A stretch of 64,000 nucleotides of DNA from Macrostomum lignano. Lineage: Eukaryota. Shown piece after piece: positions 17,866 to 61,000 of the stretch. A program made the position numbers and the translations under genes. Each line of letters starts with the position of its first letter. Within the stretch, counting starts at the first letter, position 1. The notes under the pieces are model-generated. The model did not search any database and was not told the DNA's origin. It saw nothing but the letters and a program-made list of their open reading frames with translations. Where the stretch lies: assembly GCA_002269645.1 (NCBI GenBank), contig NIVC01002754.1:13673-77672 (forward strand), given 5' to 3'.

Positions 17866-18285
17866 CTGAAAGACTGGCCCAGCAACTAAGGATCTGGAAG
17901 GCTGGCCCAGCAACTGAGGATCTGGAAGGCTGGCCCAGCAACTGAGGATCTGGAAGGCTGGCCCAGCAACTGAGGATCTGAAAGGCTGGCCCAGCAACTG
18001 AGGATCTGGAAGGCTGTGGCCAGCAACTGAGGATCTGGGAGGCTGGCCCAGCAACTGAGAATTTGTGAGGCTGGCCCAGCAACTGAGAATCTGTGAGGCT
18101 GGCCCAGCAACTGAGGATCTGGGAGGCTGGCCCAGCAACTGAGGATCTGGGAGGCTGGCCCAGCAACTGAGAATCTGTGAGGCTGGCCCAGCAACTGAGG
18201 ATCTGGGAGGCTGGTCCAGCAACTGAGAATTTGTGAGGCTGGCCAGCAACTGAGAATCTGTGAGGCTGGCCCAGCAACTGAGGAT
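17866..18285. repeat. 28-bp minisatellite family A (GGCTGGCCCAGCAACTGAGGATCTGGGA)n, copy 1
   Basis: Direct reading; same unit at 25121-25535, 32783-33150 and 35582-35930. Confidence 0.95.
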
Positions 18286-18676: not shown

Positions 18677-21098
18677 TCAGCAATGGTTTTTATCGACTTT
18701 AAACACGGCATTGACCATCCGACCGCCGCACATTTGGTCAGAGTCGCCGGCGCAGGGCAATCGACAGTCGGAACGCTCGGCCTCGCCATTGCTGCCGTAG
18801 TTGTCGCCACAGCGGCACTGGTTGCCTTCCCGAAGGGCGAACACCGACGTGCCGCGTTTCAGACAGAGGCAGTTGCACTTCTCACGGGTCATGTCATCGC
18901 TGGACGACGCAAGTGAATCGAAATCGGGCCAATGATTGCTCTCGAAAAAGCAGCCGACAAAATCTGGAAATGGCAGCCAATTGTAAAATGCAGATTTACG
19001 CACATATGAAAAGCATTGAATCTATTTGCGCAAAAAGATGCAACCCATGTGATGCGCTATTTTTTATGATATCTTTCTTGTTTTCGAATTTATTAGATCA
19101 TTCTGACCCTTCTGTGATGGGTTTAGGCCTTTTCGGCTCCTTTGTGGAAGCCTTCGGGCCTCAGGTCTCAGAAATAAATCAATTAGAGTCCTGGCCCCCC
19201 ACTCCTGTCAGATGGTCAGCCCCATGGTAGCTTGATCGTGTGGCGAGCAGTCTAGGTCCTATAGCTTAGAGAGGGACAGCGAGAGACAAGCACGGAGAAT
19301 TTTGAAGGTAGAAATTAGATAATCCGCAGATTAACTAACCCGCTGCCACCAGCCCGTGCGTTCTGGCTCACCACACCGGAACTTTCGAAATCGGGCTTCC
19401 GACTAGAGGGGGTTTAGCACTTACCTGCCAACTAGTGTCTTTTTGCTGTCAATCTCGAAGTCATAGCCGATGATAAGGGACAGATGGTTTGATTAGTTGA
19501 TTGCATGTGCGCGAGTTTACTAGCCCGTATGTACAATTGCTCGCTGTACAATCATAACAATATATTAGTAAGTGCCTTGGCGCCCTGGGCAGCCAAGATT
19601 GGTCTACGCCTGAAGCCTATTTCTTGTCTTGGCTTGTTCCCACACATTGAAGTTAAAACATAAAAAACCACTTACGTCCGGCCTTGATGGCACTTTTCTT
19701 CTTTTCTCCAAAAACTTGAACTTCGCAAAGAGTCAAGGGTGAGCGTTTCCGATTGTTGATGCGTAGCTTCTGGCCGACCTTATTGCACTGGAACGTCTTC
19801 ACAGAAAAGAAGCCGCTCGACTTGAACGAGGCGCACTCCTGACCGTCCACTGTGATGGAAAAGTCGTTGAGTCTCTCTGAGCAGCAGTCGAGTCGGTTGT
19901 AGATTCGAACCTGCTTGACGAGCGATCGCTCTTTGAGAGTCGCTTGCCACCAGCCAAACTCAGATTTTGTGTGAGTGCAGCTTTGTAAGTGCCAATTAGG
20001 ACTCGTGTTACCATCGAATGCTCTTTGGCAAACACCATTGGTTGCTGTAGAACTTTGAGAGCATGACACGAGAGCAAGGCGGTCTAAAAAAGGAAAGAGT
20101 TGTTTAAATGCAAGCTAGGTTACACAAGTACTCTATTAAGCATCAGTATGGATAAAAACGGATTGACACCCTGTATTACTCTTTGGAGTTGGCAGTTTGA
20201 CTTCCTCTCCGTACACCTGCACTTCGCAGAGAGTCAGCGGTGACGTTTTACGGTTCCTCACAGTCACAACTTGACCGATCCTGTCGCATTTGAATGCGCG
20301 AATTGAAAGAAACTGTTGGACTTGTACGACGCGCACTCGTGCCCATCGACCATGATTACAAAGTTGTTTAGCCGGTCTGAGCAACAGTCAATCCGGTTGG
20401 TGATTCGAACCGTCCGAATGTGAGACAGCGACTTGGTTCTCGCCTGCCACCAGCCCTTCTCATTTTTGGTGTGAGAGCAGGAATTGTGGCTATAGAATTG
20501 GTGATCGTTGTTGTCGATGGCTCGACTGCAGACGCCTTCAGAAGAGGTTGAAGACTGCAGACATTCCATCATTGGGAGCCTCGCTGAAATCAGATGCACA
20601 AGTTCAAATATTTAGTTCTATGCTACTTCCGAAAATGTTTCTATTGGCTAAAGCCTGCTAGTATAGTATGTCTTTCTTATGCGCTTACCGCCATAAGGAT
20701 TTCTTGGAATGTAGTTTCCGAAGATCTGCACTTCGCAAAGAGTCAGCGGCGTTTTGATTCGATTCTTGATTACCAGCATCTGACCGACTTTGTTACACCT
20801 GAAGATCTTCACTGAAAATGACTTTCTCGAACTGTATGACTCGCACTCTTGACCATCGAGAAAGATGGAGAAGCTGTTGAGTCTGTCTGAGCAGCAGTCG
20901 AGTCTGTTGTAGATTAGAACAAATCGCACTCGAGCGAATCCGGATCCCCTTATGTAGGCTTGCCAAAAGCCTTTCTCGGCCTTTGTGTGCGTGCACGAGC
21001 CTGCGGCATAGTGCTGGTTAATTCTTCATCGAAGGCTCGTTCGCACGCGCCTCCAGATGACGTAGAGCTTTGGTAACACTCACCAAATTGCAGTTTGT
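18677..21098 (-). CDS. F-type lectin (fucolectin) x3 + C-terminal WSC domain protein; two 1-bp frameshifts (pseudogene or assembly indels); 5' end not found
   Basis: Phase-1 exons 21098-20689 (410 nt), 20583-20180 (404 nt), 20083-19676 (408 nt), 18963-18677. Each lectin exon has the HX26RXDX4R-type motif (SCTHTK...RLDCCSER) and LTLCEVQVFG. WSC pattern FVGCF...MTREKC...C...FAL..GNQCRCG...C..PC.GD..QMCGG. Confidence 0.85.
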
Positions 21099-25120: not shown

Positions 25121-25535
25121 GCCCAGCAACTGAGAATCTGTGAGGCTGACCCAGCAACTGACACTCTGGGAGGCTGACCCAGCAACTGAGGATCTGGGAG
25201 GCTGACCCAGCAACTGACACTCTGTGAGGCTGACCCAGCAACTGACACTCTGGGAGGCTGACCCAGCAACTGACACTCTGGGAGGCTGACCCAGCAACTG
25301 ACACTCTGGGAGGCTGACCCAGCAACTGAGGATCTGGGAGGCTGGCCCAGCAACTGACACTCTGGGAGGCTGACCCAGCAACTGAGGATCTGGGAGGCTG
25401 AAGCAGCAACTGACACTCTGGGAGGCTGACCCAGCAACTGACACTCTGGGAGGCTGACCCAGCAACTGACACTCTGGGAGCTGGTCCAGCAACTGAGGAT
25501 CTGGGAGGCTGACCCAGCAACTGAGGATCTGGGAG
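25121..25535. repeat. 28-bp minisatellite family A, copy 2
   Basis: CCCAGCAACTGA(GGAT/CACT)CTGGGAGGCTG(A/G) units. Confidence 0.95.
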
Positions 25536-26558
25536 GGTGAAAAGAAAGTGATATTAGAGACAAAAATGAATAAAATCGTAGCAAAGAATTGGTAATGATA
25601 TTCTATTCACAAAAAACACATTATAGCATTATTTATCAAATATATAACTCCGCTTTAACAACCAGTTTTATTTTCGTTCACCTAAAACGCCAGCACTAGC
25701 AACAACAAACGAATTTTATTAGCGACTTTATCGAAAGCACAAGTCAAAACAGTCCAGCTTTATTAGAAAAGAAAACCGGTTGCGCAAAAAATGCATTCGT
25801 AATCGTAAGATTTCAAGCTTAATAACTTACACTATTATACTACTAAAAAGTAGGACGCAGAATCAGTAGAACATAAAAAATATATCAACCATAGTTTGTG
25901 AAATACGACACATGATTGGAAGAGCATGTAGTTTTAGCTTAATAGGAAAATTAATTATGATTAGAAATTTATAAGTTTGGCTTTATAAATTAGGAACTTA
26001 AAAAATATGGGTTAGAGGATAAATGGGTTAAGTTTCTAAAAATATTTTAATTCTCTAAAATATGACACCAATTAATCAATATAGGTTGTTTAACTATTGA
26101 AATGAAAATAATGTCTGACTTTCGTATGTCTCTTACACTTTACGGTATGTCACTGTTTTCATGTCTTCTACATGTTTATGTCATTATGTGTTTTAATGTC
26201 TCAGATGCTTTAATGCCTCTACATGTATGTATATTACTCGTAATTTTCTCTAAAAATTTTATGTCACTGTCGTTTAATATCTTTTGTTTTTGACGTCACT
26301 ATCTTTTAATGTTTCTTACGTTTTTTAATGCTAATTTAAAAGATAGCGAACGAATATCTTTTAACGTACGTTATGTTCTTTTAAAGTTTCGATTGCATTT
26401 CATTGTCCCTACTATAGTCTTTTAATGTGTATTACGGATTTTTAAATGTCTCTTAAATAATTCTCTGAAATATGTCTCTCAGTTAAAACAAAATTTTCTA
26501 TGCTCCCAAGCAAACTGTTATAATGCCTAAGATTTCAAATCAAATCAATCAATCAAAT

Positions 26559-32500: not shown

Positions 32501-35500
32501 GCTCGGATCGAATTATACTGCGAATCACTTGTAAAGTGGCTTCGTCTACAGGGGATGAGGCGCTAGCGGAGACTGGGCCAGTGGCGTCGAAAGAACACGG
32601 CTCAGCTGGTGGTGGCGGAAGCAGCGAGGGCGGCTGCGCAGGCGGCGGCGTTGGTGGAGCAACTCGAGGTTCAGCTGCAGTTTGCTGTGGCGAACCACTG
32701 GACGGCCCTGAGACACTTTCTGGAAATGCAAGAAGAAATTGTTTAGTTCTGGTACCACTGGGCTGGCCTAGAAACTGAGGCTTTGAGAGGCTGGCACAGC
32801 AACTGAGGCCTTGAGAGGCTGGCAAAGCAACTGAGGATTTAGGAGGCTAGCACAGCAACTGAGGATCTGGGAGGCTAGCACAGCAACTGAGGATCTGGGA
32901 GGCTGGTCCAGCAACTGAGGATCTGGGAGGCTGGCCCAGCAACTGAGGATCTGGAAGGCTGGCTCAGCAACTGAGGATCTGGAAGGCTGGCCCAGCAACT
33001 GAAGATCTGGGAGGCTGGTCCAGCAACTGAGGATCTGGGAGGCTGGCTCAGCAACTGAGGATCTGTGAGGCTGGCCCAGCAACTGAGAATGTGGGAGGCT
33101 GGCCCAGCAACTAAAGATTTGGGAGGCTGGCCCAGCAAATGAGGATCTGAGCTGTTAGCAGTGGATGCATACCAGCCTACTGAATCTAATAAATAAAATG
33201 TACTATGCAACGACGCATCATCGGTTATAAATAAACATGTTTAGTTTGTTTCGAAGCGATTGATTCTTATCCCTATATTTATCTCAGTCTTTCCTTCTCA
33301 ATTTCACTAGTCTGATGAGTGAGAGAACTCAGAGCTGTAGTTCCAATTAGGCATTAGTCACGAACTGCTTCTTTGCACCTAGGTTTTATCCCTGGATTCC
33401 AATTGCATTTGGTTCCTAATTGGGCTATATTTAACCGACTTAGACACGAGGCTTCGCGGAGAAAATATTAGAGAAACTTTGAAGTAAGACAATATGAAAC
33501 GCTGATTGGATTGCAACTAGCTCGTACTCGCAGATAAAATGCATACCAATCCGACGGAATTACACATAGTAACTCGTCTTATACTGAGCCTTTTCTACAG
33601 CGGTTGAGCAAAAGTTGGGTGCGAGCCTGTGTAAAGGAAACTTAAACGTAAGTTTATTCTTCGACCTACTAGTACTAGCTACTATCTGATCTTAGCATCT
33701 CTCTCTACTTGTCTCTGTATCTTGCCGGCCTCTAATCCTGCCGCTTATCTGCGTATCTCGCCGGCCTCTCTTATCTTGCCGCCTCTTTGAACTTGCCACT
33801 TGTCTGTGTATTTCGCCGGCCTTTCTTATCTTGTCGCCTCTTTGATCTTGCCGCTTATCTGTGTATCTCGCCGGCCTCTTTGTTCTTGCCGCTTATCTGT
33901 GTATCTCACTGGCCTCTTTGTTCTTGCCGCTTATCTGTGTATCTCGCCGGCCTCTCTTATCTTGCCGCCTCTTTGAGCTTGCCACTTGTCTGTGTATTTC
34001 GCCGGCCTTTCTTATCTTGTCGCCTCTTTGATCTTGCCGCTTATCTGTGTATCTCGCCGGCCTCTTTGTTCTTGCCGCTTATCTGTGTATCTCACTGGCC
34101 TCTTTGTTCTTGCCGCTTATCTGTGTATCTCGCCGGCCTCTCTTATCTTGCCGCCTCTTTGAGCTTGCCACTTGTCTGTGTATTTCGCCGGCCTTTCTTA
34201 ATATCTTGTCGCCTCTTTGATCTTGCCGCTTATCTGTGTATCTCGCCGGCCTCTTTGTTCTTGCCGCTTATCTGTGTATCTCGCCGGCCTCTTTGTTCTT
34301 GCCGCTTATCTGTGTATCTCGCCGGCCTCTTTGTTCTTGCCGCTTATCTGTGTATCTCGCCGGCCTCTTTGTTCTTGCCGCTTATCTGTGTATCTCGCCG
34401 GCCTCTTTGTTCTTGCCGCTTATCTGTGTATCTCACCGACCTCTCTTATCTTGCCGCCTCTTTGATCCTGTCGGCCTCTCATCTTGCCGCATCTTTGCTC
34501 TTGCCGCCTGTATCTGATCTGAGCCTCTGATCGTGCTAAATCTGACTTCGAAGATTCTTAGTCTGATTTTGCTACCCCAGTCAAATAAGCGCTGTTTACG
34601 CCATTGCCGTAATCGCCCTCAACGGCACAAGTCTGCAACAAATCATTAATCTGGAACTTGCAAGTTAAATTAATATATCATAAATTTTATCTCAACAGAC
34701 AAAACGATGACAAACGACAACAACGGAGATTCTTTCATCAGCACAGTCGCTTACCGGCAAGAAAATCAAATAAGTTTAACAACAGCATCCACACAGACTG
34801 AACAGCAACTATTTGGCACAGATTTCATATCGGTCGGCGGCCTGGCTTTAATATTTGTGGCACTATTCCTGCTACTATCTTCAGCAGTAGGCATTTTAGT
34901 GTATCAATTAGCTAGCCGGGGCCTAATCTGGCGCAGTACTGAAGCCGAGCTCAATCAGGTCAACCAGCTCTGGTCTCGGCCATCTAGCAGGGCTGGCACA
35001 ACAATGGGCACTAGGACCACAGCAATGGGCGGTAGTCCTAGCGAAGCTGGCGCAATGCCAACGTCCCCTAGAAGCAGCCTGAGTGGCGGCAGCGGCAGGC
35101 AAAGCGGCGAAGCTTCTGCCACTAATAGCGGCATCGTTGTCCGACGAAACAGCAGCCGAGTGTCCATTATATCGCCTAGTAGCGTCACTAGCAACAGCAA
35201 TAGCAACAACAATATTAACAGTACTACTCATAGTAATAGTCCGCAGACATCTATATCCCCGTCAATTGCGTTGACAAGAGTGGAAAGTTGAGTTACTAAG
35301 TGCATCTAATTGCTCAAGTCTTATTATTTTGCAAGTTTCATTTTTTCTCATTAACCTCAAATTCACAAGCATTGACACAATTGAATCTCATTAAATATAA
35401 AGCAAAACATCCCGAAGTCTCGGGTATAACAAAAAATTACCTTTTAAAATTGCCAGTCGTTTAGACGTCAAATTAGCCTTCTTTTCAGTCAGCTGTAAAA

Positions 35501-37859
35501 TGAATTTTATACTAATGCTTGTAAGCTAAAACAAGAACGAGGAGCACTTGGCAATCTTAAAAATTAACAATATAATATAGTACAGCAACTGAGGATCTGT
35601 GAGGCTGGCCCAGCAACTGAGGATCTGTGAGGCTGGCCCAGCAACTGTGGATCTGGGAGGCTGGCCCAGCAACTGAGGATCTGGGAGGCTGGTCCAGCAA
35701 CTGAGGATCTAGGAGGCTGGTCCAGCAACTGAGGATCTGGGAGGCTGGTCCAGCAACTGAGGATCTGGGAGGCTGGCCCAGCAACTGAGGATCTAGGAGG
35801 CTGGTCCAGCAACTGAGGATCTAGGAGGCTGGTCCAGCAACTGAGGAACTGTGAGGCTGGCCCAGCAACTGAGGATTTGGGAGGCTGGACCAGCAACTGA
35901 GGATCTGGGAGGCTGGCCCAGCAACTGAAGACGTGGGATGCTTGCCCATCAAGCTCTGGGTAGCAACACCCTATGACTGAATGCCATACATATAAACTCA
36001 CCTGTTTCATAGCAGCCTCCTTATTTTCAAGAGTCTGCTGCATCTCTTGCACCCTGAGCCGCAGCTCCGCAAGCTCTTGACGCTGACTCTCTAGCTCAGT
36101 CTCCAGCTGCTCCTCTTGCAGCGACAATTCCAGGGCTTGCTGCAATCGCTGAACGGCAAGACTTGGCTGAGGTTTTGACTCCGTTGATCTAGTCTCATCC
36201 ACTGCTTGATCAGGTGCTTCAGGTGCTAATTCGCCCCCCTGAGGCCCCGCACCAGACGTTGAAGCTTGCGATTGCTGCGACGTTGAAGCTGACAGAAGGC
36301 TGTTTATTGGCTGAGACATCGGCGCCTGCGACACTGTGTCAGATTCGTCTTCGCCTCTGGGATCGGGTCGTTTGGATCGCGATGTTCGCGACTGTTGCAA
36401 TAAAGGGTTCAGCGAGAAATTAGGCGGTGGTCAGAAATAATGGCTTGGGCGCTAAACATGCTACTTATCTGCGCTTTTGCTAAATAGTAATATAAGTTTG
36501 TTATTATGTACTCTTACTAAAGACTAGCATCTCTCTCTATGGAGAGGTTAGCATCTCTCTCTATGGGGAGGGTAGCATCTCTCTCTATGGAGAGGGTAGC
36601 ATCTCTCACTATGGGGAGGGTAGCATCTCTCTCTATAGGGAGGGTAGCATCTCTCACTATGGGAGGGTAGCATCTCTCACTATGGAGAGGGTAGCATCTC
36701 TCACTATGGGGAGGGTAGCATCTCTCACTATGGAGAGGGCAGCATCTCTCACCATGGAGAGGGTAGCATCTCTCTCTATGGGGAGGGTAGCATCTCTCAC
36801 TATGGGGAGGGTAGCATCTCTCACTATGGGGAGGGTAGCATCTCTCTCTATGGAGAGGGTAGCATCTCTCTCTATGGGGAGGGTAGCATCTCTCACTATG
36901 GAGAGGGCAGCATCTCTCACTATGGAGAGGGTAGCATCTCTCTCTATGGAGAGGGTAGCATCTCTCACTATGGGGAGGGTAGCATCTCTCACTATGAGGG
37001 TAGCATCTCTCACTATGGAGAGGGTAGCATCTCTCTCTATTGGAGGGTAGCATCTCTCACTATGGGGAGGGTAGCATCTCTCACTATGAGGAGGGTAGCA
37101 TCTCTCTATGGAGAGGGTAGCAAAATTCTACTAACACACCTTGCCACCAGCCGCGGCGCCACTATTAACAACATCCTCCCAGATGCGTCGATCTTTGCGA
37201 GTTTTCGCACCGCTATTGGCCAAATCCAACACTCGGACGGCTCGATTCGGCGAATTCGACATGCCAGAAGTTGTCGGGCCAGCAGTTTCAGTCTGATCAG
37301 ATGACAAGTGAACTGATGGTCGAATTCGACCGCTGCTAGCACTACTACTAGTAGTTGGATTAGCTGCAGGTAACGATTGCGCTTCATTTTGCCATGGCTC
37401 TACCTGCTGCTGCATTAACTGTGGCGGAGTTGGCAGCAAAGCCCCTGTCTGCTGCTTCTGTTGTTGCTGATGGTTTTGACGCTGATAAGGACCAGGATAT
37501 GCTGATGAATGATAAGCAGAACTGTCAATACCATGCTGATGGCCCCAATGTCCATATTGCTGTTGTTTTTGTTGTTGTTGATGCTGCTGCTTGTGGCGAG
37601 GGGGTCTATATCTGTGATGATGGTTGTTGCCACTACCACGGCCACTGCTGCCACAACCAATGTTGCCACCACCACGGCCAATGTTGCCACCACCACGGCC
37701 AATGTTGCCACCACCATGGCCAATGTTGCCACCACCATGGCCAATGTTGCCACCACCACGGCCAATGTTGCCACCACCATGGCCAATGTTGCCACCACCA
37801 CGACCACCATTGCCACCATTATGACCACTGCTGCCACCTCTTTGACTATGGGCAGACAT
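26559..37859 (-). CDS. ZNF106: Zinc finger protein 106-like (low-complexity N-terminal part, coiled coil, WD40 repeats, C-terminal C2H2-type fingers); partial model
   Basis: Exons ~37859-37140, 36391-36002, [one exon not located], 32719-31972, 30798-30121, 27222-26559. WD40 segment YTGSADGTAKRFSL..RVNCMVVT..HRWDCIYLGLGSG..PVSCLE..IVR|DERSGILL, then FRCYWSNCTLAF..DLSSHLKRVH..KCRWRGC and LELSLQEEQL, all parallel the recalled vertebrate ZNF106 C-terminus. Confidence 0.8.
27236..30075. repeat. Compound minisatellite filling a ZNF106 intron: 22-bp GGGCGGATTTGAGAGTGAGGAA, 21-bp GAAGAGGGCGGTTTTTAGATT, 19-bp GGGGCGGATTGTAGATTCA
   Basis: Three sequential blocks (27236-28070, 28057-28300, 28300-30075) sharing a GGGCGGATT(T/G)TAGA core. 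Confidence 0.95.
30832..31890. repeat. ~20-bp minisatellite (GCTTATCTCTGCTGTCTACC)n in ZNF106 intron
   Basis: Direct reading; source of ORFs 30632-32255. Confidence 0.95.
32783..33150. repeat. 28-bp minisatellite family A, copy 3
   Basis: Direct reading. Confidence 0.95.
33708..34530. repeat. ~38-bp minisatellite (TTGCCGCTTATCTGTGTATCTCGCCGGCCTCTTTGTTC)n with higher-order repetition
   Basis: Direct reading; 33780-33960 is repeated at 33960-34140. Confidence 0.92.
34707..35291 (+). CDS. Putative single-pass membrane protein (194 aa) nested antisense in a ZNF106 intron
   Basis: Non-repetitive ATG-initiated ORF; hydrophobic helix ISVGGLALIFVALFLLLSSAVGILVYQL; Ser/Thr/Asn-rich tail; candidate acceptor CTCAACAG just upstream. 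Confidence 0.6.
   Translation: MTNDNNGDSFISTVAYRQENQISLTTASTQTEQQLFGTDFISVGGLALIFVALFLLLSSAVGILVYQLASRGLIWRSTEAELNQVNQLWSRPSSRAGTTMGTRTTAMGGSPSEAGAMPTSPRSSLSGGSGRQSGEASATNSGIVVRRNSSRVSIISPSSVTSNSNSNNNINSTTHSNSPQTSISPSIALTRVES
35582..35930. repeat. 28-bp minisatellite family A, copy 4
   Basis: Direct reading; in-frame read-through of it extends ORF 35564..36400 artefactually. Confidence 0.95.
36524..37120. repeat. 23-24-bp minisatellite (GAGGGTAGCATCTCTCACTATGG)n in ZNF106 intron
   Basis: Direct reading, ~25 copies. Confidence 0.95.
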
Positions 37860-37860
37860 T

Positions 37861-40800
37861 TAACTGCACTGTATTATCATAGTACAAAAACTTTATAAAT
37901 ATTTTAATTTCTTCTTTTGAGGCTTTATGTCCAACTGCAATTGGATTTTAGACAGATAATAGTCAGAGATAAAGTGAGAATACAATATCAACTTAGTGTT
38001 CTTATTTAATAAAGGTGTAGAATAGCTTAATACTTAACATATCCAACTCTTATAGTATAATATATCCAATTTCATGTTTTGAAGGTATCCAACCAATGTT
38101 TAAATTCAAACCTAGCAATGTTAACTAGGGGCTTATATGATAAAATTTGGCCTATAGCTTATGCCACTTCAGATAAAAATAGTTTTGGTTAACTATAAGT
38201 TAGCATTAGTGAATTTAAACACCAAAGGGATATTGTTTTTTTAGATTAGGCTTAGAGCAAGTTTTATTCTGGTTTATATAATGTCTTTAGTGACTCTTCT
38301 CTAGATTTTCTATTAATGTATTTATCTTTTTTGGGTTATTTTGATAAAATACTTGATTACTTTATCCTTTGTAGAAAGATATTGGCAATCTAGTGCCCCC
38401 CTCTGGGATGCCCAGTAAGCAAGGAGCAAAGAATATTCATGGAAATTCATTAAAAAGCACATGGCACTTTAGACAGGTCCTATTTTAAGAAAGGATCATT
38501 GGTATTATCCTCATATTTTGTAGGCTAATTTATGGTTTGCTAATCTAAACTGCAAATGCTATGTCTAATTGTCTCATTAGTTGAATTAGACTATTTCTTT
38601 TTTAAATGCTATATTCTAAGTTCCTAATAAATTCTTAGATCTTAAAACTTTCTAAGCTTTTAGCAGCCACTTTATTGACAGTTTCCTTTAGCCAATCATC
38701 ATCAAGTTGCTAAGTTTCATTAGACATCACTTTTTATGCTATTATATATAGGATTGCCTTTCTGGCATAAAAGGAGACCTTCTTGTTAACCATGGATGTT
38801 GCTAGCCTATATACCAATATTCCAATGGAGGCTAGCTTCAAATGTATATAGGTATTCAAGGAATATCACATTTACTAATGCCTACAATGTACATATCCAT
38901 CTGATTATATGTCTATACAAGTTAAACCTAAAGAGCAAAAACTTTATTCAAGTTCAATGACAAGTAATTTTTGTAAGTAAATGAAATTGCCATAGAGAAA
39001 TTGTTTTTACATAGCTATAAAGGCTTATAGCAAAAATAATAAAGGCTATTAGGAGCTAGAAAAGCCTGTAGACTAGTCTATTTTGCTAGAGTCAATATAT
39101 TTTACTTTGCTAGAATCTAAGAATATATCTAACCTTTTTTCTAGCTTAATCTTTTTAGAAATCTAGCTTTTCCCTAGCCTCAGACTTCTTTTAAAAGTTA
39201 TACTATTAGCCTTTGGTCCTTTTTTAAATATAGTCTCTGCTTTAGTTGCAATCTTTTAGAATCCTTTTATCCTTCTTAGACTCTAGCCTTTAATTAGACT
39301 CAATTAATCTAAGAATCTATCTTTTCCCTAGCTCTAATCCTTCTAGCAATTCAGCCATTCCTCTATCTGAACCCAATACTTTAAGGAATCTAGCTTCTCC
39401 CTTATTCCAATTTTTAGAAATCTAGCCATTCCTTTATCCTAATAATCCTCTAAGAATGCAGCCATTCCCCTATCCCAATCTTCTAGAGAATCTGACTTCT
39501 CTTTTATCCTAATTCTCTAAGGAATCTATCTTATCCCTCATCCTAATCCTCCAGGGAATCTGGCCTATCCTCCATTTTCCTTTAAAGAATCTGGCCTACT
39601 CTTCATTTTAGTCCTCTAGGGAATCTGGCCTATCCTTCATCACAATCCTCTAGATAATCTGGTCTTTCCTCCATTATAATCCTCTAGGGAATCTGGCCTA
39701 TCTCCTATCCTAATCCTCTAGGGAATCTGGCCTATCTCCTATCCTAATCCTCTAAGGAATCTGGCCTATCTCTTATCCTAATCCTCTAGGGAATCTGGCC
39801 TATCTCCTATCCTAATCCTTTAGGGAATCTGGCCTATCTCTTATCCTAATCCTCTAGGGAATCTGGCCTAGCTCCTATCCTAATCCTCTAGGGAATCTGG
39901 CCTAGCTCCTATTCTAATCCTCTAAGGAATCTGGCCTATCTCCCATCTTAATCCTTTAGGGAATCTAGCCTACCCTTTATCCCAATCCTCTAGGGAATCT
40001 AGCCTACCCCTCATCCTAATCCTCCAGGGAATCTTGACTACCCCCTATCCTAATCCTTCAAGGAGTCCAGCCTATTTCTTATCCCAATCCTCCAGGGAAT
40101 CCGGCCTACCCCCTATCCCAATCTTCTAAGAATCTAGCCTCTAATATGCTCACATCAACTATCCTTGGATCTAGCCTTTCAAGAATTTTTGCTTTGCTTT
40201 CAACAAATATTATTTAACTAGTTATTGTTTCTAGCTAATTCTATAGAGTAAAAATCTATTTACAGAAAAGCAGAAAACAGTTATTTATATATTATATTTT
40301 GCTTTGCAAGGCTACTTAAAGAAGTGTCTAAAGATACAAATCAATAGAGGCATACAGTGTAGCTCTTTAGTGTAAGGAAAACAAATGGCTTAAAAACAAA
40401 CTCTTATAACTCTCATAATCACTCAGGTAGTACTAGAAAATAGTAGGTCCTAGTACTGAGAAATTCCATAAGAATATCATCATAGGTTTTAAAAAGTTTT
40501 TATTACTTATCTATTTTATTATTAGCTAAAATCATTCATTAAGATATAATTTTTATTATACATTAATCATTATAGCCAGAGTGGCCAAAATTCTTGTTTT
40601 TTAATGCTTTTGTTAAAGTGTACCCAACAAAAAAGTTGATGTTGGGGTGTATCACAATATATACAATATTTTAAAAGATCTATCTATATATAACACTAAA
40701 CTGACAAAACATGCCATGAGTTTGTTTTTTTCAATAGATATTTAGGCCTAGCCTATGTGTGCTTGAGTTATATTGAATGTTTCTTTTTTATTTTTATTCT

Positions 40801-41494
40801 CTTTAGATGAACTAAAATAAAGTTTAGTGAGCATGGTAAATTGGTAATAAAGTGATTATTTTAAAAATGTCAACAATTAAATTTTACAAAAACTTTTTTA
40901 TAACCTAACAGTGGCTTGCAAAGTTATTTTTTAACTAAAAATTCAACCCTCATATTGGCTGAATTGCATAGAAAAAATTCTTATCTTGAAAGAGAAGACT
41001 TAAAAGCGCAAGCAAAGTTGTTAAATGTCCATAATGAAAAAAATGTCTTCTAAGATGGCCCACATGCCCCTCTGCAATCCATCCAACATTCTGAGATCAG
41101 CAGTATCTTTACTCAGTAATCTTTACTCATTTTAATGTAGGCCTACCTTGAGATATGCAGCGAGGTAAGGAGACAACATTGACAAGAGAAGACTAAAGAG
41201 CAGTGGCTTAGAGAAAGCCCAAGCAAAGGTGTGCTATGCAAATTTCATGGCTTGAAAAAGAGCTAGCTACTGCTGTTGCTACTGCTGCTGAGGCAGAAAC
41301 TTGTCACAACAGTCCTTATGCAAGCAGGAAGTTTGCTTCAATGGCTATAACAAGGAGTTTTTTATTTAACCCTATATGACAAAAGAAATCTAACATGTGT
41401 GCACTAAATCATTTTTATGCCAAGTTTAATATATCCCTATTCTCTTGGTCATGAGAATGAGAGTCACATCATGGAAAAGGAGGGGCTCATAAAG
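37861..41494. other. CpG-depleted, TpA-rich block lacking ORFs
   Basis: Manual scan finds only 3 CpG (~40102, ~41007, 41161) in ~3.6 kb; no ORF of 60 aa or more in 37.9-41.46 kb; CpG-rich sequence resumes abruptly at 41495. Confidence 0.85.
39100..40140. repeat. Degenerate 34-bp minisatellite (GAATCTGGCCTATCTCCTATCCTAATCCTCTAGG)n
   Basis: 34-bp period (e.g. GAATCT at 39723 and 39757); copies differ almost only by C/T and G/A. Confidence 0.9.
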
Positions 41495-42009
41495 CGGGCG
41501 CATGGGCCCGGAGATAGGCCACGCGAGAGCCCACGCACGCGCGGTTTTAATATGCACACGCACAAAAAATTAACAAAATGACAAGGGCCAGCAGAAAGAG
41601 AGGAGAGAGATAACGAATGAATTATAATTCTAAAGATGAGAGGCAAAGGTGGCAATCGAATCTCACTTTATCTCACCTAATCTCACTTTATCTCACCTAA
41701 TCTCACCCTATCCCACCGACGCGAATCTCACCCTATCTTATTTTAATGATCATATTATTGCGTTCAGCAATTTTCATGCTCTGTTTAAGGATTTATCAAA
41801 ACTTCGAGCCAATATTGAGGCAAGTTCCCCTCTAGTATAACAGCTAGTTAGTGCAGTACACGGTTCTTGTACTGGAGGCTGGTCCCCAGTAGTTGCAGTT
41901 GCAGTTTTGATCACCAAGACAAGAGAGCTGTTAGTTGGTATGGTATTGGTATTGGAACGTTAGGATTCCAATGTGAGTCACGCCAATTGCACCGCCTGTA
42001 GGCCAGCAG

Positions 42010-50314: not shown

Positions 50315-51282
<968 letters not shown>

Positions 51283-52572: not shown

Positions 52573-55048
52573 CGAGGCTCCCAATGATGGAATGTCTGCA
52601 GTCTTCAACCGCTTCTGAAGGCGTCTGCAGTCGAGCCATCGACAACAACGATCACCAATTATTTAGCCACAATTCCTGCTCTCACACCAAAAACGAGAAG
52701 GGCTGGTGGTAGGCGAGAACCAAGTCGCATTCGGGCGAATCGAATCACCAACCGGATTGACTGTTGCTCAGAATTTGCAGAGTCATTATATTTGCAGAGC
52801 CATTTTATTTGCAGAGCCATTTTATTAGCAGAGCCATTTTATTCGCAGAGCCATTTTATTTGCAAACCTGTGCAAATAGTGCTGACACCTCCTGGCATCG
52901 CGGCCAGATCACCAGGCGTCATAAACCGCGTGCTCGCCGGCGCTCCTGAACCCTCCGAGTGGACCATCGCGCACATCGTGCCGATCCCGAAGAAGGCAGG
53001 AACAACGTGGAAAGAAGACCACCGCGGGATCTAGCTGATGTCCTGCACCGCGAAGCTTTTTAACCGGCTGCTGCTCAATCGTCTGCAGTCTGTGCTAGAC
53101 CCGTACCTGCGGTACGAGCAAAACGGATTCCGGCCGCAACGCGGTACAGTGACACAGATCCCCACACTCCGCCGTGTCATCGAGGAGGCGCGCATCCGCC
53201 AGTCTACGCTGATCATTGTCTTCGTTGACTTTCGAAAGGCGTTTGACTCGGTGTTGAGAGCCGCGCTCCCCTTCGTCCTTCGAGCCTACCGGGTACCCCA
53301 GCAGCTAATCGACGCTGTCATAGCGCTGTATCGTGACACTCGAGCTGCTGTGGTGACGGCGGACGGCCTGTCTGACCTGTTCGATACTTCATCAGGAGTT
53401 CTGCAGGGCGACACGCTAGCGCCGTTCCTCTTCGTGCTGCTGCTGGACTGGGTGCTTCGGACCGCACTCCCCTCGGCTAACGACGGCTTCCTGCTGCGCA
53501 GACGCATCGGTCGCCGCCACGGCGAAAAGCGCCTAAGCGTGCTTGGCTCCGCCGACGACCTCGCCCTCCTGTCCTAGCCCGTTAAAGGCGCCAAGCGCCA
53601 GATAGACAAGTTGGTCGAAGTGGCATCGAGCGTCGGTCTGGTTGTCAACACGCTGAAGACCGAGGTGCGGACTGTGCCGGCCGACATCCCAGCGGACCTG
53701 ATATGCCGCGGTGCAGACTGGCAGACGACCAAGCTCGCACGCTGCCAGCGGTTCACCTACCTCGGCAGTCTGGTGCCTCACGTGGACGAAGACCTCCTGC
53801 GGCGGCGAGGACTTGCCTGGGCGGCTTTCCGTTCAATCCAGGCCGTCGTCGAGGTTGAAGCGCTAGAGGGTTCGGCTGTCGCAGGCGGTGGTCGAAACCG
53901 TCCTGCACTACAACGCCGAGACGTGGACGCTGACGGCTACGCTGGAGCGGCAGCTGGACTCGGCGCACTCAGGGCTGCTCCGTGCGGCCTTTCGAGCTGA
54001 CGAGTGCGTCGGGACCGAGGCCCTGTACGATCGGGCCAAGCTGCAGCTCCCGTCCACCATCCTGCGCCGGCGGCGACTTCAACTAGCGGGCCACGTGATC
54101 CGGGCAGAGTGCTACTGCCCCCAACCTGTTCAGGACGTCCTGCTGCTCACCCTGCAGGCCCGCTCAGGCGGGGTCAGGCCCAAACCCGTCGATACGTAGA
54201 CTGCCTGCTGTGCGACGCTGGGGCGCCCGACACTGCCAACGGGGCGGACTTCGTCCGTTCTCAGGCTCTGCGGCGCGCCATCTGACGCTCCCTGCTCTGT
54301 GACTTTATTTGCGGGGCTGCGTATTTTGTTGCTTCTGTTGTTGTTGTCAGAATGGCTTAACAACTTCGTAATCATGGTCGATGGGCACGATTACGCGTCG
54401 TACAAGTCCAACAGTTTCTTATCAATTCGCGATTTCAGATGTGACAGGATCGGTCAAGTTGTGACTGTGAAGAACCGTAAAACCGCTGACTCTCTGTGAA
54501 GTGTAGGTGTATGGATAGGAAGTCAAACTGCCTACCCCAAAGAGTAATACAGGGTGTCAATCCGTTTTTATCCATACTGATGCTTAATAGAGTACTTGTG
54601 TAACCTAGCTTGCATTTAAACAACTCTTTCCTTTTTTTAGACCGCCTTGCTCTCGTGTCATGCTCTCAAAGTTCTACAGCAATCAATGGTGTTTGCCAAA
54701 GAGCATTCGATGGTAACACGAGTCCTAATTGGCACTTACAAAGCTGCACTCACACAAAATCTGAGTTGGGCTGGTGGCAGGCCACTCTCAAAGAGCGATC
54801 GCTCGTTAAGCAGATTCGAATCTACAACCGACTCGACTGCTGCTCAGAGAGACTCAACGACTTTTCCATCACATTGGACGGTCAGGAGTGCGCCTCGTTC
54901 AAGTCGAGCGGCTTCTTCTCTGTGAAGACGTTTCAGTGCAATAAGGTCGGCCTGCAGATTCGCATCAACAATCGGAAGCGCTCACCCTTGACTCTTTGCG
55001 AAGTTCAAGTCTTTGGAGAAAAGAAGAGAAGTGCCATCAAGGCCGGAC
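52573..55048 (+). pseudogene. Inverted paralog of F-type lectin domains 2 and 3, disrupted
   Basis: 52499-55065 aligns to the reverse complement of 19660-20655. Domain-2 exon (52573-52774 + 54347-54543) has TGG TGG TAG at 52710, two small deletions and a LINE insertion. Domain-3 exon 54641-55048 (408 nt) is intact. Confidence 0.88.
52775..54346 (+). mobile_element. 5'-truncated RTE/RTEX-type non-LTR retrotransposon (degraded reverse transcriptase)
   Basis: RT motifs PIPKK, EQNGFRP, VDFRKAFDSV, GVLQGDTLAP, SADDL (from YADDL); stops and frameshifts; (TTG)n 3' tail; 7-bp TSD TCAGAAT at 52768-52774 and 54347-54353. Confidence 0.92.
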
Positions 55049-55089
55049 GTAAGTGGTTTTTAATATTTTATCTATCTATCTATCTATCC

Positions 55090-56255: not shown

Positions 56256-57805
<1,550 letters not shown>

Positions 57806-58091: not shown

Positions 58092-61000
58092 TTAAGCAGA
58101 ATCGTTGGAAACCTTTTGAGTGTCTCTGCTGGACTCTGCTTTTTCTGGCTTCCCTTGGTCTTCATTTAAAATCTCATCGGCTTTCGTTGTGTCCTCAGAT
58201 GTTTCTTGAGACGTGTTCTGAGCTGGTTTCTCTGTTGCGTCCTCAGCTTCTTTCTCAGTTGTGTCCTCCGCGGGATTCTGTGGTGTGTCCTCAGCTGGTT
58301 TCTCAATAGTGTCCTCAGCTGGTTTCTCAATAGTGTCCTCAGCTGGTTTCTCAGTTGTGTCCTCAGCTGGTTTCTCAATAGTGTCCTCAGCTGGTTTCTC
58401 AATAGTGTCCTCAGCTGGTTTCTCAATAGTGTCCTCAGCTGGTTTCTCAATAGTGTCCTCAGCTGGTTTCTCAGTTGTGTCCTCAGCTGGTTTCTCAATA
58501 GTGTCCTCAGCTGGTTTCTCAATAGTGTCCTCAGCTGGTTTCTTAGTTGTGTCCTCCGCGGGATTCTGTGGTGTGTCCTCAGCTGGTTTCTCAATAGTGT
58601 CCTCAGCTTCTTTCTCAGTTGTGTCCTCCGCGGGATTCTGTGGTGTGTCCTCAGCTGGTTTCTCAATAGTGTCCTCAGCTGGTTTCTCAATAGTGTCCTC
58701 AGCTGGTTTCTCAGTTGTGTCCTCAGCTGGTTTCTCAATAGTGTCCTCAGCTGGTTTCTCAATAGTGTCCTCAGCTGGTTTCTTAGTTGTGTCCTCAGCT
58801 GGTTCCTCAGGTGTGTCCTCAGCTGGTTTCTCAATAGTATCCTCAGCTGGTTTCTGAGTAATGTCCTCAGCTGGTTTCTGAGTAATGTCCTCAGCTGGTT
58901 TTTCAGTGATGTCCTCAGCTGGTTTCTCAGTTGTGTCCTCAGCTGGTTTCTCAATAGTGTCCTCAGCTGGTTTCTCAATAGTATCCTCAGCTGGTTTCTC
59001 AAAAGTATCCTCAGCTGGTTTCTCAAAAGTATCCTCAGCTGGCTCCTCTGGTGTGTCCTCAGCTGGTTTCTCAAAAGTATCCTCAGCTGGTTTCTCAGTA
59101 ATGTCCTCATCTGGTTTCTCAGTAGTGTCCTCAGCTGGTTTCTCAGTAGTGTCCTCAGCTGGTTTCTCAGTAGTGTCCTCAGATGGTTTCTCAGTAGTGT
59201 CCTCAGCTGGTTTCTCAGTAGTGTCCTCAGCTGGTTTCTCAGTAATGTCCTCAGCTGGTTTCTCAGCTGCTGCATATTCAGAGTTTTTCGTTGTTGTTTC
59301 TCTAGGAGAGTTCTCAACAGGTTTTAGCGTTGAACTTACAGATGTTTCCTTGTTGTTGTGTGCAAAACTAACTGCAACCTTCTCAACACTTTCCGAGTCA
59401 TCAGCTGTTTCTGTCTCTGAGTGACTCTCCATTGATTTAGAATTGTCACTTGTATCGTCTACTGTCTCGGAATCATCAGCAGCTTCTGAATCACCAGCTG
59501 TCTTCTCAGCAGCTTCTGAATCACCAGCTGTCTTCTCAGCAGGTTCTGAATCATCAGCTGTCTTCTCAGCAGCTTTTGAATCATCAGCTGTCTTTTCAGC
59601 AGCTTTTGAATCATCAGTTGTCTTCTCAGCAGCTTCTGAATCACCAGCTGTCTTCTCAGCAGCTTTTGAATCATCAGCTGTCTTCTCAGCAGGTTCTGAA
59701 TCATCAGCTGTCTTCTCAGCAGGTTCTGAATCATCAGCTGTCTTCTCACCAGCTTCTGAATCATCAGCTGTTTTCTCAGCAGGTTCTGAATCATCAGCTG
59801 TCTTCTCAGCAGGTTCTGAATCATCAGCTGTCTTCTCAGCAGGTTCTGACTCGTCATCTGTATTCTCAGAGGACTCTGACTCGTCATCTGTATTCTCAGA
59901 GGAGTCTGAATCATCGGCTGTCTTCTCAGAGGATTCTGAATCATCAGTTGTCTTCTCAGCAGCTTCTGAATCATCAGCTGTCTTCTCAGCAGCTTCTGAA
60001 TCATCAGCTGTCTTCTCAGCAGGTTCTGAATCACCAGCTGTCTTCTCAGCAGCTTTTGAATCATCAGCTGTCTTTTCAGCAGCTTTTGAATCATCAGTTG
60101 TCTTCTCAGCAGCTTCTGAATCACCAGCTGTCTTCTCAGCAGCTTCTGAATCACCAGCTGTCTTCTCAGCAGGTTCTGAATCATCAGCTGTCTTCTCAGC
60201 AGCTTTTGAATCATCAGCTGTCTTTTCAGCAGCTTTTGAATCATCAGTTGTCTTCTCAGCAGCTTCTGAATCACCAGCTGTCTTCTCAGCAGCTTTTGAA
60301 TCATCAGCTGTCTTCTCAGCAGGTTCTGAATCATCAGCTGTCTTCTCAGCAGGTTCTGAATCATCAGCTGTCTTCTCACCAGCTTCTGAATCATCAGCTG
60401 TTTTCTCAGCAGGTTCTGAATCATCAGCTGTCTTCTCAGCAGGTTCTGAATCATCAGCTGTCTTCTCAGCAGGTTCTGACTCGTCATCTGTATTCTCAGA
60501 GGACTCTGACTCGTCATCTGTATTCTCAGAGGAGTCTGAATCATCGGCTGTCTTCTCAGAGGATTCTGAATCATCAGTTGTCTTCTCAGCAGCTTCTGAA
60601 TCATCAGCTGTCTTCTCAGCAGCTTCTGAATCATCAGCTGTCTTCTCAGCAGGTTCTGAATCACCAGCTGTCTTCTCAGCAGGTTCTGAATCACCAGCTG
60701 TCTTCTCAGCAGGTTCTGAATCACCAGCTGTCTTCTCAGCAGGTTCTGACTCGTCATCTGTATTCTCAGAGGAGTCTGAATCATCGGCTGTCTTCTCAGG
60801 GGATTCTGAATCATCAGTTGTCTTCTCAGCAGGTTCTGAATCAACAGCTGTCTTCTCAGCAGGTTCTGAATCATCAGCTGTCTTCTCAGCAGCTTTTGAA
60901 TCATCAATTGTCTTCTCAGCAGGTTCTGACTCGTCATCTGTATTCTCAGAGGATTCTGAATCATCTGTTGTCTCCCCAGAGGATTCTAAAAAAATTTCTG

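What the first reader, a model, noticed from the sequence alone, without database searches (positions are those of the whole stretch)
37390..41494. Sharply bounded ~4-kb block of directional C-to-T/G-to-A hypermutation (RIP-like) in an animal genome
Seen: only 3 CpG in 37861-41494, where roughly 100 would be expected at ~33% GC (hand estimate). Similarly AT-rich intergenic DNA elsewhere (8-10.5 kb, 25.6-26.5 kb) keeps many CpG. TAG/CTA/TAA are abundant, and CpG-rich DNA resumes abruptly at 41495. The embedded 34-bp repeat records the process: CCGGCC to CTGGCC to CTAGCC, CTCCAG to CTCTAG, CCCAAT to CCTAAT, CCCATC to CCTATC. So CpG and CpA are both converted, and nearly all copy differences are C/T or G/A. 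Established: CpG-to-TpG follows 5mC deamination; CpA-to-TpA is the signature of fungal RIP or non-CpG methylation/deaminase activity. Inference: a localised cytosine-targeting mutational process acted on this segment.
Basis: partly seen in the sequence, partly recalled or inferred. Interest (0 to 1): 0.82.

Follow-up and report, generated by a model that had tools for sequence, protein, structure and literature searches.

The report
CpG-free island in a flatworm genome
A 3.7-kb stretch of repeat-derived, non-coding DNA in the flatworm Macrostomum lignano has lost almost every CpG while its neighbours keep theirs, which most likely marks a rare patch of dense germline DNA methylation rather than a fungal-style RIP process.

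Summary
Window 37802-41494 holds 3 CpG where about 99 are expected (o/e 0.03). In 380 non-tandem 300-bp windows of the same species outside the block the mean is 0.90 +/- 0.26, and no run of more than two low windows occurs in about 114 kb. The window is Macrostomum lignano. Reviews say this species keeps DNMT1 and DNMT3 and has low-level 5mC in an unknown pattern.

The RIP reading is only partly supported:
- Both classical RIP indices miss RIP values (TpA/ApT 1.05; (CpA+TpG)/(ApC+GpT) 1.47).
- A context test calibrated on 73 control windows shows T-for-C excess in all NCG contexts (z +3 to +9). Among non-CpG contexts only CAG stands out (z +3.5 and +1.8), with CTG weaker. CAA, CAC and CAT show nothing.
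- There is no strand bias and no APOBEC/AID context.
- The 34-bp array is transition-rich (Ts/Tv 5.5 against 1.25 pooled elsewhere).

The direction of change could not be polarised, because no homeolog or paralog could be fetched.

Best reading (0.55): a native, repeat-derived intergenic block, densely CpG-methylated in the germline with weaker CAG methylation, eroded by 5mC deamination. This is a known kind of footprint in a species whose methylation targets are undescribed. It is moderately interesting. A RIP-like animal defence remains a minority possibility.

The parts
37802..41494 (.). Core CpG-void block (3693 bp, GC 0.336, 3 CpG, o/e 0.029)
37390..37801 (.). Left transition zone with sparse CpG. 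The slightly longer span 37390-37860 has 8 CpG and o/e 0.25. It lies inside the ORF below. Its 21-bp coding repeats alternate CACGG and CATGG (Arg/His on the minus strand).
   Evidence: (family D4)
37131..37859 (-). 242-aa Gly/His/Gln-rich ORF whose ATG abuts the block. It has no Pfam family and no database relative, so whether it is a gene is unproven.
37861..39100 (.). Left unique AT-rich part (GC 0.30, 0 CpG). It carries the strongest CAG-to-TAG excess, above all 73 control windows.
38420..39050 (+). Possible decayed reverse-transcriptase remnant (..LLTMDVASLYTNIP.., FKFNDKxFLxVNEIAIE) across three frames with many stops. The resemblance to Penelope-like elements comes from memory only and no search supported it.
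   Evidence: reading; negative searches
39101..39468 (+). Degenerate outlying copies of the 34-bp unit
   Evidence: families D3, D5, D6
39469..40140 (+). 34-bp minisatellite, 19.9 copies, 80% matches, pyrimidine-rich on the + strand. One copy keeps CCGG (the CpG at 40102). Ts/Tv is 5.5.
40141..41494 (.). Right unique AT-rich part (GC 0.31, 2 CpG, o/e 0.06)
41495..41560 (.). Abrupt CpG-dense right boundary (10 CpG in 66 bp, o/e 1.37)

Best explanation
The block is native Macrostomum lignano DNA: a non-coding, repeat-derived intergenic segment made of a 34-bp minisatellite, its decayed outliers and flanking unique AT-rich DNA that may hold an old retroelement fragment. In the germline this patch has been densely cytosine-methylated by the DNMT1/DNMT3 system that the species retains, while nearly all surrounding DNA is unmethylated. 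5-methylcytosine deaminates to thymine much faster than cytosine is lost, so every CpG was converted to TpG or CpA and then drifted on. The weaker side activity of de novo methyltransferases at CAG produced a smaller CAG-to-TAG loss.

Shown: the CpG void, its bounds, the CG >> CAG context signature, strand symmetry, and rarity in about 114 kb of non-tandem control DNA from the species. From the literature: DNMT1 and DNMT3 are present with low-level 5mC. Inferred: that this patch is or was methylated, that the decay happened in place, and the direction of change.
For: - CpG-specific loss. CpG o/e is 0.03 with GpC o/e 1.37. All four NCG and all four CGN contexts show T-for-C excess at z +3 to +9 against 73 control windows.
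- Among non-CpG contexts only CAG is shifted. z is +3.5 and +1.8 in the two independent unique halves, or +4.2 and +2.1 against AT-rich controls. The left half exceeds all 73 controls; only one control exceeds the right half. CAA, CAC and CAT are at the control mean. CAG is the non-CpG site preferred by DNMT3 enzymes in mammalian ES cells and oocytes (PMC5485512).
- Base composition is strand-symmetric (C 183/G 187 and C 208/G 214), as expected for a process acting on duplex DNA on both strands.
- The species keeps DNMT1 and DNMT3 and has low-level 5mC (PMC11292947; PMC9246332; PMC10658182). One 3.7-kb block in a roughly 170-kb sample fits rare, discrete targets.
- The high GpC (1.67-1.70) and GCA/TGC usage typical of this genome is shared by the block.
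- CT/AG is raised (o/e 1.27-1.40) without a TpG/CpA excess. A 2026 preprint reports this as the long-term compositional correlate of methylation-driven CpG loss (10.64898/2026.09.02.747768).
- Both edges have a zone of roughly 400-500 bp with sparse CpG, more like a domain edge than an insertion junction.
Against: - No methylation data for this locus were available, and the methylation pattern of the species is undescribed.
- CpG o/e of 0.03 is lower than in bulk vertebrate DNA or in methylated invertebrate genes, so plain equilibrium decay needs a very high CpG mutation rate or great age.
- TpG/CpA is not raised (o/e 1.02-1.15, like controls).
- Other transposon-derived pieces in the window are CpG-rich: the non-LTR RT has o/e 1.14 and the Crypton-like gene about 0.8. 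Methylation is therefore not aimed at mobile elements in general.
- The block's non-CpG trinucleotide usage correlates only r = 0.46 with pooled host DNA. Controls have median 0.81 and minimum 0.46.
- The array shows C/T variation in CpC and CpT contexts too.
- Direction of change is unpolarised.
Confidence: 0.55

Rival explanations
1. Inherited composition. The block is one or more insertions of a repeat or transposon family that was already CpG-poor when it arrived. Either the family is methylated wherever it sits, or it came from another genome. The sharp bounds would then be insertion junctions, not edges of a methylation domain.
For: - The right edge is abrupt.
- Non-CpG trinucleotide usage is atypical for the host: r = 0.46 against a control median of 0.81.
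- There is a possible decayed retroelement motif and a private 34-bp array.
- A 17-nt inverted match, 37966-37982 against 41678-41694, roughly brackets the block.
- L003 7500-8450 is a second, milder CpG-poor patch with a transposon-like coding remnant.
Against: - No target-site duplication, LTR or clear terminal repeat lies at the CpG boundaries. I estimated that the inverted match could arise by chance, and its right arm sits in a tandem array outside the block.
- No other copy of any part of the block exists in 167 kb of the species.
- No protein family hit supports a transposon.
- If the DNA has sat unmethylated for as long as its degree of decay suggests, CpGs should have re-formed, and they have not.
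- The left edge is graded and runs into a flanking ORF.
Confidence: 0.2
2. An active, RIP-like mutagenic defence in an animal. A DNMT-like enzyme or deaminase is directed to repeated DNA and converts C to T in bursts at CG and CAG, rather than slow decay of a methylated patch.
For: - CpG loss is near total at o/e 0.03, beyond ordinary methylation decay.
- There is a CAG-to-TAG excess and a threefold CTAG excess in unique DNA.
- The tandem array has Ts/Tv 5.5 against 1.25 pooled in 17 other arrays, and 3.2-4.2 against about 1.0-1.5 in shifted self-alignments and paralog pairs.
- The C/T states in array columns 14-19 are scrambled among copies, suggesting repeated independent hits.
- The block is sharply bounded and AT-rich, like RIP isochores.
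Against: - Both classical RIP indices fail.
- CAA, CAC and CAT contexts are untouched.
- The unique flanks are not known to be repeated.
- Pyrimidine-rich arrays elsewhere in the window also show Ts/Tv of 2.1-2.7, and one array reaches 8.7.
- By my hand tally of the table, distinct variant states in the array are about 25 transitions to 23 transversions.
- A fitted CpA decay rate of 0.2-0.4 is also recovered from AT-rich control DNA given CpG-only decay in silico.
- RIP is described as fungus-specific (PMC2621366, PMC7882544).
Confidence: 0.12
3. Assembly chimera or contaminant: the block belongs to another organism, or was mis-joined into this contig.
For: Composition changes abruptly, trinucleotide usage is atypical, and read support could not be examined.
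Against: - Both flanks are typical M. lignano minisatellite-rich DNA, so two false joins would be needed.
- The block shares the host's unusual high GpC and GCA/TGC usage.
- CpG thinning extends about 470 bp into the flanking host ORF.
- It is not a mitochondrial insert: no long open frames under the standard flatworm code 9. Code 14 has a single stop and gives stretches up to 247 aa in overlapping frames that do not resemble mitochondrial membrane proteins by eye; no family search was run.
- No Rfam or tRNA feature is present.
Confidence: 0.05
4. APOBEC/AID-type editing of a retroelement cDNA or of exposed single-stranded DNA.
For: A possible retroelement remnant has many G-to-A-like codon changes and stops. 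My recollection, not checked here, is that AID/APOBEC-like deaminases exist in some invertebrates.
Against: - There is no strand asymmetry (C is about equal to G and A to T in both unique halves).
- There is no excess in TC, CC or WRC contexts. TCC, CCC and GCN are if anything protected.
- The main target is CpG, which is not an APOBEC/AID signature.
Confidence: 0.03

Closest known systems
Mosaic (fractional) germline CpG methylation of invertebrates, read from CpG depletion. The Ciona, honeybee and cnidarian examples are from my own knowledge. Transposon-targeted methylation in cnidarians and other invertebrates is reported in PMC8857917.
   Same: There are discrete domains in which CpG is lost to 5mC deamination beside domains with CpG o/e near 1. 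GpC is untouched, both strands are affected, and the organism carries DNMT1 and DNMT3.
   Different: The depletion is far deeper: 0.03 here, against roughly 0.3-0.6 in methylated invertebrate genes by my recollection. The target is a small non-coding repeat island rather than gene bodies. Other transposon fragments nearby are spared. A CAG component is present. Methylation at the locus itself is unmeasured.
Fungal repeat-induced point mutation (RIP)
   Same: The block is a sharply bounded AT-rich block, apparent C-to-T/G-to-A change occurs on both strands, stop codons are abundant, and a repeated sequence is involved.
   Different: Both RIP indices fail. CpG, not CpA, is the main target, and only CAG among the CpA contexts is affected. 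The unique flanks are not known to be duplicated. The organism is an animal, and no RID-type enzyme was examined.
DNMT3-dependent non-CpG (CAG) methylation in mammalian ES cells and oocytes (PMC5485512, PMC3630097)
   Same: The context hierarchy is CG >> CAG > other CH.
   Different: It is known as an epigenetic mark, and I know of no report of it as a mutational footprint. It has not been demonstrated in flatworms. Here it is inferred only from a TAG-over-CAG excess.
APOBEC3 hypermutation of retroelements in vertebrates
   Same: Both involve clustered transitions in a possibly retroelement-derived sequence.
   Different: There is no strand bias and no TC, CC or GG/GA context, and the signal is CpG-centred.

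Membership tests
Fungal RIP | (CpA+TpG)/(ApC+GpT) <= 1.03, i.e. depletion of the RIP targets | tested here: not met
   1.47 for the core and 1.35-2.91 for sub-blocks. The rest of the window gives 1.29. Threshold from PMC2621366.
Fungal RIP | TpA/ApT >= 0.89 and well above non-repeat controls | tested here: inconclusive
   1.05 against 0.85 for the rest of the window. This passes the nominal threshold but is far below the 1.65-2.2 of RIP-affected repeats, and AT-rich controls reach similar TpA levels.
Fungal RIP | CpA-to-TpA dominance among C-to-T changes in aligned repeat copies | tested here: inconclusive
   In the 34-bp array, T is the majority state at CpA/CpG columns (0.70-0.87) and C at most CpY columns. 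Direction is unpolarised and variants spread by duplication. In unique DNA, CAA, CAC and CAT show no shift.
Fungal RIP | Acts on duplicated DNA in a fungus carrying RID/Dim-2-type enzymes during the sexual cycle | not testable with these tools
   The organism is the flatworm M. lignano. Genome-wide copy number of the block and the enzyme repertoire could not be queried.
Methylation-driven CpG decay (mosaic methylome domain) | CpG o/e far below the genomic background while GpC and base composition do not explain it | tested here: met
   0.03 against 0.90 +/- 0.26, with GpC o/e 1.37.
Methylation-driven CpG decay (mosaic methylome domain) | The organism has maintenance and de novo CpG methyltransferases and detectable 5mC | not tested
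   Taken from reviews citing Wasik et al. 2015: DNMT1 and DNMT3 are conserved and 5mC is low-level. The primary paper was not held.
Methylation-driven CpG decay (mosaic methylome domain) | The domain is methylated in the germline | not testable with these tools
   No bisulfite or nanopore data were available.
Methylation-driven CpG decay (mosaic methylome domain) | Excess of the decay products TpG/CpA, or of the long-term correlate AG/CT | tested here: inconclusive
   TpG/CpA o/e is 1.02-1.15, the same as controls. CT/AG is 1.27-1.40 against 0.93-1.25 in controls. A preprint reports AG/CT, not TpG/CpA, as the strongest correlate.
APOBEC/AID editing | Strand-asymmetric G-to-A or C-to-T in TC, CC or WRC contexts | tested here: not met
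   C is about equal to G and A to T in both halves. TCN, CCN and GCN contexts have zero or negative z.
Penelope-like or other retroelement insertion | Recognisable reverse-transcriptase domain and element termini or target-site duplication | tested here: not met
   Pfam gave no hit even at E <= 10. The protein database gave none at E <= 1e-3. The one PDB hit was irrelevant. No terminal structure lies at the CpG boundaries. Only a short motif resemblance from memory remains.
Nuclear mitochondrial insert | Open frames under the flatworm mitochondrial code, or mitochondrial rRNA/tRNA | tested here: not met
   The longest stop-free stretch under code 9 is 94 aa. Code 14 has a single stop and gives overlapping stretches up to 247 aa that do not look like membrane proteins. 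No tRNA or Rfam hit was found.

The most novel reading that the evidence does not exclude
Macrostomum lignano, and perhaps other free-living flatworms that kept DNMT1/DNMT3, run a targeted genome-defence process that is mutagenic. It would erase cytosines at CG and CAG in selected repeat islands: a functional analogue of fungal RIP in an animal, driven by DNMT-type enzymes. This would go beyond ordinary slow decay of a methylated patch.
Probability: 0.12. Interest if true: 0.85.

Novelty: new member of a known kind. Interest (0 to 1): 0.45.

Why it matters
[quoted passage not shown] A CpG-void island in an otherwise CpG-replete genome is a sequence-only pointer to where that machinery acts in the germline. 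It suggests the targets are rare, discrete repeat islands rather than gene bodies or transposons in general. A genome-wide scan for such islands would give a cheap map of candidate methylation targets to test by bisulfite or nanopore sequencing and DNMT knock-down. If the erosion proved to be an active burst-like process, it would be the first RIP-like defence described in an animal.

Tried and rejected
- Paralogs inside the window. BLAST of the block against the rest of the window found nothing, also with C>T and G>A collapsed alphabets. The five extra M. lignano loci also gave nothing.
- Homeolog or allele. The stop-ridden RT-like translation gave no hit. The Crypton-like ORF identified the species. 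The flanking Gly-rich ORF gave no hit, and its 8000 word-sharing candidates look like a cap filled by low-complexity matches. Exact look-ups of six window ORFs and ten more candidate sequences all failed. L001 shares only about 1.8 kb, a mobile element, with the window, so it is not syntenic.
- RT identity. Pfam, PDB sequences and the protein database gave nothing.
- Forward simulation of context-specific C-to-T decay from control DNA. It preferred CpA decay of 0.2-0.4 over CpG-only decay (delta lnL +95). The leave-one-out calibration showed that AT-rich controls with CpG-only decay give similar fits, so I do not rely on it.
- Mitochondrial insert, rejected.
- APOBEC/AID contexts and strand bias, rejected.
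- The primary genome paper (PMC4603488) is not held. Other M. lignano papers say nothing on methylation patterns.
Full report
[quoted passage not shown] The 441-aa ORF at 12745-14070(-) is 98% identical to NCBI protein BOX15_Mlig005367g15, and at least eight further near-identical copies lie on other contigs of GCA_002269645.1. About 36% of the window is tandem repeat, in line with the published description of this genome (PMC5730564).

37861-41494 contains exactly three CpG (40102, 41007, 41161) where 98.8 are expected from C and G content. CpG o/e is 0.03 and GpC o/e is 1.37. Counted from the last left-hand CpG, the core is 37802-41494: 3693 bp, GC 0.336, o/e 0.029. The gap 37801-40102 is the longest CpG-free gap in the window. 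All other long gaps are tandem arrays whose unit has no CpG. Without the 34-bp array, the block still has 2 CpG in 2962 bp against 70 expected.

**Background.** I fetched five unrelated M. lignano loci of 21 kb each. Tandem repeats were masked with TRF. Across the window and these loci, 380 non-tandem 300-bp windows outside the block average CpG o/e 0.90 +/- 0.26. Six are below 0.3 and never more than two adjoin. All nine block windows are 0-0.15. P(<=3 CpG) is 2e-37 at the local background and 4e-6 even at o/e 0.2.

**Edges.** The right edge is abrupt, with 10 CpG in 41495-41560. The left edge is graded. 37390-37860 has o/e 0.25 and lies inside a 242-aa Gly/His/Gln-rich ORF (37131-37859, minus strand) whose ATG abuts the block. 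37131-37389 has o/e 1.18.

**Anatomy.**
- The block has no ORF longer than 54 aa starting inside it, no Rfam family and no tRNA.
- Its middle is a 34-bp minisatellite (39469-40140, 19.9 copies, 80% matches), with degenerate outliers at 39101-39468.
- At about 38420-39050 (+), three frames read like pieces of a reverse transcriptase (..LLTMDVASLYTNIP.., FKFNDKxFLxVNEIAIE) broken by many stops. That resemblance to Penelope-like elements is from memory. Pfam, the protein database and PDB sequences gave nothing, so I treat it as a lead only.
- No terminal repeats or target-site duplication sit at the CpG boundaries. A 17-nt inverted match (37966-37982 / 41678-41694) may be chance.

**Is it RIP-like?** The two classical indices say no. 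TpA/ApT is 1.05 against 0.85 for the rest of the window; RIP-affected fungal repeats show 1.65-2.2. (CpA+TpG)/(ApC+GpT) is 1.47, and 1.35-2.9 in every sub-block, against a criterion of <=1.03 (PMC2621366). These indices are blunt, so I built a calibrated context test.

**The context test.** For each 3' context XY, I computed the log of (TXY/CXY) over (T/C), both strands pooled. I did this for the two unique halves of the block and for 73 tandem-masked 1.25-kb control windows of the species.

| Context | z, left half | z, right half |
|---|---|---|
| CGN (four contexts) | +6.8 to +8.8 | +3.7 to +9.0 |
| CAG | +3.5 (+4.2 vs 19 AT-rich controls) | +1.8 (+2.1) |
| CTG | +2.2 | +1.1 |
| CAA, CAC, CAT | 0.0 to +0.9 | -1.2 to +0.3 |
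| CCN and other CTN | -0.7 to -3.4 | -0.7 to -3.4 |

For CAG, the left half exceeds every control, and only one control exceeds the right half.

**5' neighbour and strand.**
- All NCG contexts are shifted (z +3.4 to +9.2).
- C after G is relatively protected.
- TC, CC and WRC contexts show no excess, and base composition is strand-symmetric.
- In raw terms, TAG/CTA o/e is 1.37 against 0.74-0.89 in controls. CAG/CTG is 0.98 against 1.29-1.39, and CTAG is 2.2 against 0.72.

The footprint is therefore CG >> CAG, on both strands. It is not generic CpA and not an APOBEC/AID pattern.

**The tandem array.** Relative to its consensus, the array has 61 transitions and 11 transversions (Ts/Tv 5.5). Seventeen other arrays in the window pool to 1.25, with a range of 0.4-2.7 and one array at 8.7. 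Shifted self-alignments give 3.2-4.2, against about 1.0-1.5 for other arrays and dispersed paralog pairs.

It is weaker evidence than it looks, for four reasons:
- Variants spread by duplication.
- By my hand tally of the table, distinct variant states are about 25 transitions and 23 transversions.
- Other pyrimidine-rich arrays also reach 2.1-2.7.
- Direction is unknown.

The single copy that keeps CCGG, and the scrambled C/T states in columns 14-19, fit repeated C-to-T hits but do not prove them.

**Native or foreign?** The block shares the host's unusual high GpC (1.67-1.70) and GCA/TGC usage. Its non-CpG trinucleotide usage correlates only r = 0.46 with pooled host DNA. Controls have median 0.81 and minimum 0.46, and shuffled sequence gives about 0.

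That fits native DNA reshaped by a mutational process, or an element with its own composition. A double mis-join with a contaminant is unlikely, because both flanks are typical host DNA and the CpG thinning runs into the flanking ORF. It is not a mitochondrial insert.

**Mechanism.** Reviews citing the 2015 genome paper state that M. lignano retains DNMT1 and DNMT3 and has low-level 5mC. [quoted passage not shown] I could not read the primary paper.

Loss of CpG through deamination of 5mC in the germline is the established reading of CpG depletion in mosaic invertebrate methylomes. This is general knowledge; transposon-directed methylation in invertebrates is shown in PMC8857917. De novo methyltransferases methylate CAG as their main non-CpG site in ES cells and oocytes (PMC5485512). 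A patch that is a strong DNMT target in the germline would therefore lose CG completely and CAG partly, on both strands, with sharp domain edges. That is what is seen.

The missing TpG/CpA excess (o/e 1.02-1.15) and the raised CT/AG (1.27-1.40) match what a 2026 preprint reports as the long-term compositional outcome of methylation-driven CpG loss.

I put this at 0.55. What it does not explain well:
- the depth of the depletion (0.03);
- the sparing of other transposon fragments in the window (non-LTR RT o/e 1.14);
- the atypical trinucleotide usage.

**Rivals.**
- Inherited composition of an inserted repeat family, methylated wherever it sits or foreign: 0.20.
- An active RIP-like burst process at CG and CAG: 0.12.
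- Mis-assembly or contaminant: 0.05.
- APOBEC/AID editing: 0.03.

A forward simulation that seemed to favour extra CpA decay did not survive its own calibration on AT-rich controls.

**What could not be done.** No homeolog, allele or outgroup of the block could be fetched. Directionality and the substitution spectrum therefore remain inferred.

**Verdict.** This is a real and statistically extreme CpG-void island. It is most likely the mutational shadow of a rare, dense germline methylation target in a flatworm whose methylome is undescribed. That is a known kind of footprint in a new place, of moderate interest, with a minority chance of something more unusual.

Noticed in passing
window 17861-18285, 25122-25540, 32761-33149, 35583-35952: One 28-bp minisatellite family (unit about CAGCAACTGAGGATCTGGGAGGCTGGCC) sits at four separate places, with 82-91% identity between arrays. 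About 36% of the window is tandem repeat.
   Followed up: partly
window 12745-14070 (-): An intact 441-aa DUF3504/QRICH1 (Crypton-derived, tyrosine-recombinase-like) ORF belongs to a multi-copy family. Eight full-length copies on other contigs differ from it by only 9-13 residues, and only about 1.8 kb is shared with L001, so it behaves like a recently mobile element.
   Followed up: partly
window 53038-54000 (+): A non-LTR reverse-transcriptase fragment (RVT_1, E 4e-18) lies in GC-rich DNA (0.62) with CpG o/e 1.14. It is a transposon piece that is not CpG-depleted, unlike the block.
   Followed up: partly
L003 7500-8450: A patch of about 900 bp in another M. lignano contig has CpG o/e 0.12-0.23 and a transposon-like coding remnant. 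It may be a smaller second example of the same phenomenon.
   Followed up: partly
window 17101-17400: This is the only other non-tandem 300-bp window in the 64 kb with CpG o/e below 0.2 (2 CpG, GC 0.38).
   Followed up: no
window 19651-20386 and 54342-55073: Duplicated F5/8-type-C (fucolectin-like) exons, 94% identical, lie in opposite orientation 34 kb apart.
   Followed up: no
window 37966-37982 and 41678-41694: A 17-nt inverted match (94%) roughly brackets the block. The right arm lies in a 10/20-bp tandem array just outside the CpG boundary. It could be a relic terminal repeat or chance.
   Followed up: partly
window 58092-61241 (-): A 1049-aa open frame is built of 24-bp and 30-bp acidic repeats (EKPAEDTT / AEKTADDSE). 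Its low CpG o/e (0.12-0.29) simply reflects repeat units without CpG.
   Followed up: no
window 50316-51281 and 56257-57805: Very long microsatellites: (AGT)n of 966 bp and (ATCTATCT)n of 1.5 kb.
   Followed up: no
window 62831-63976 (-): This ORF matches the dynein heavy chain C-terminal domain (Pfam Dynein_C, E 1e-9), probably an exon of a dynein gene at the window's end.
   Followed up: no
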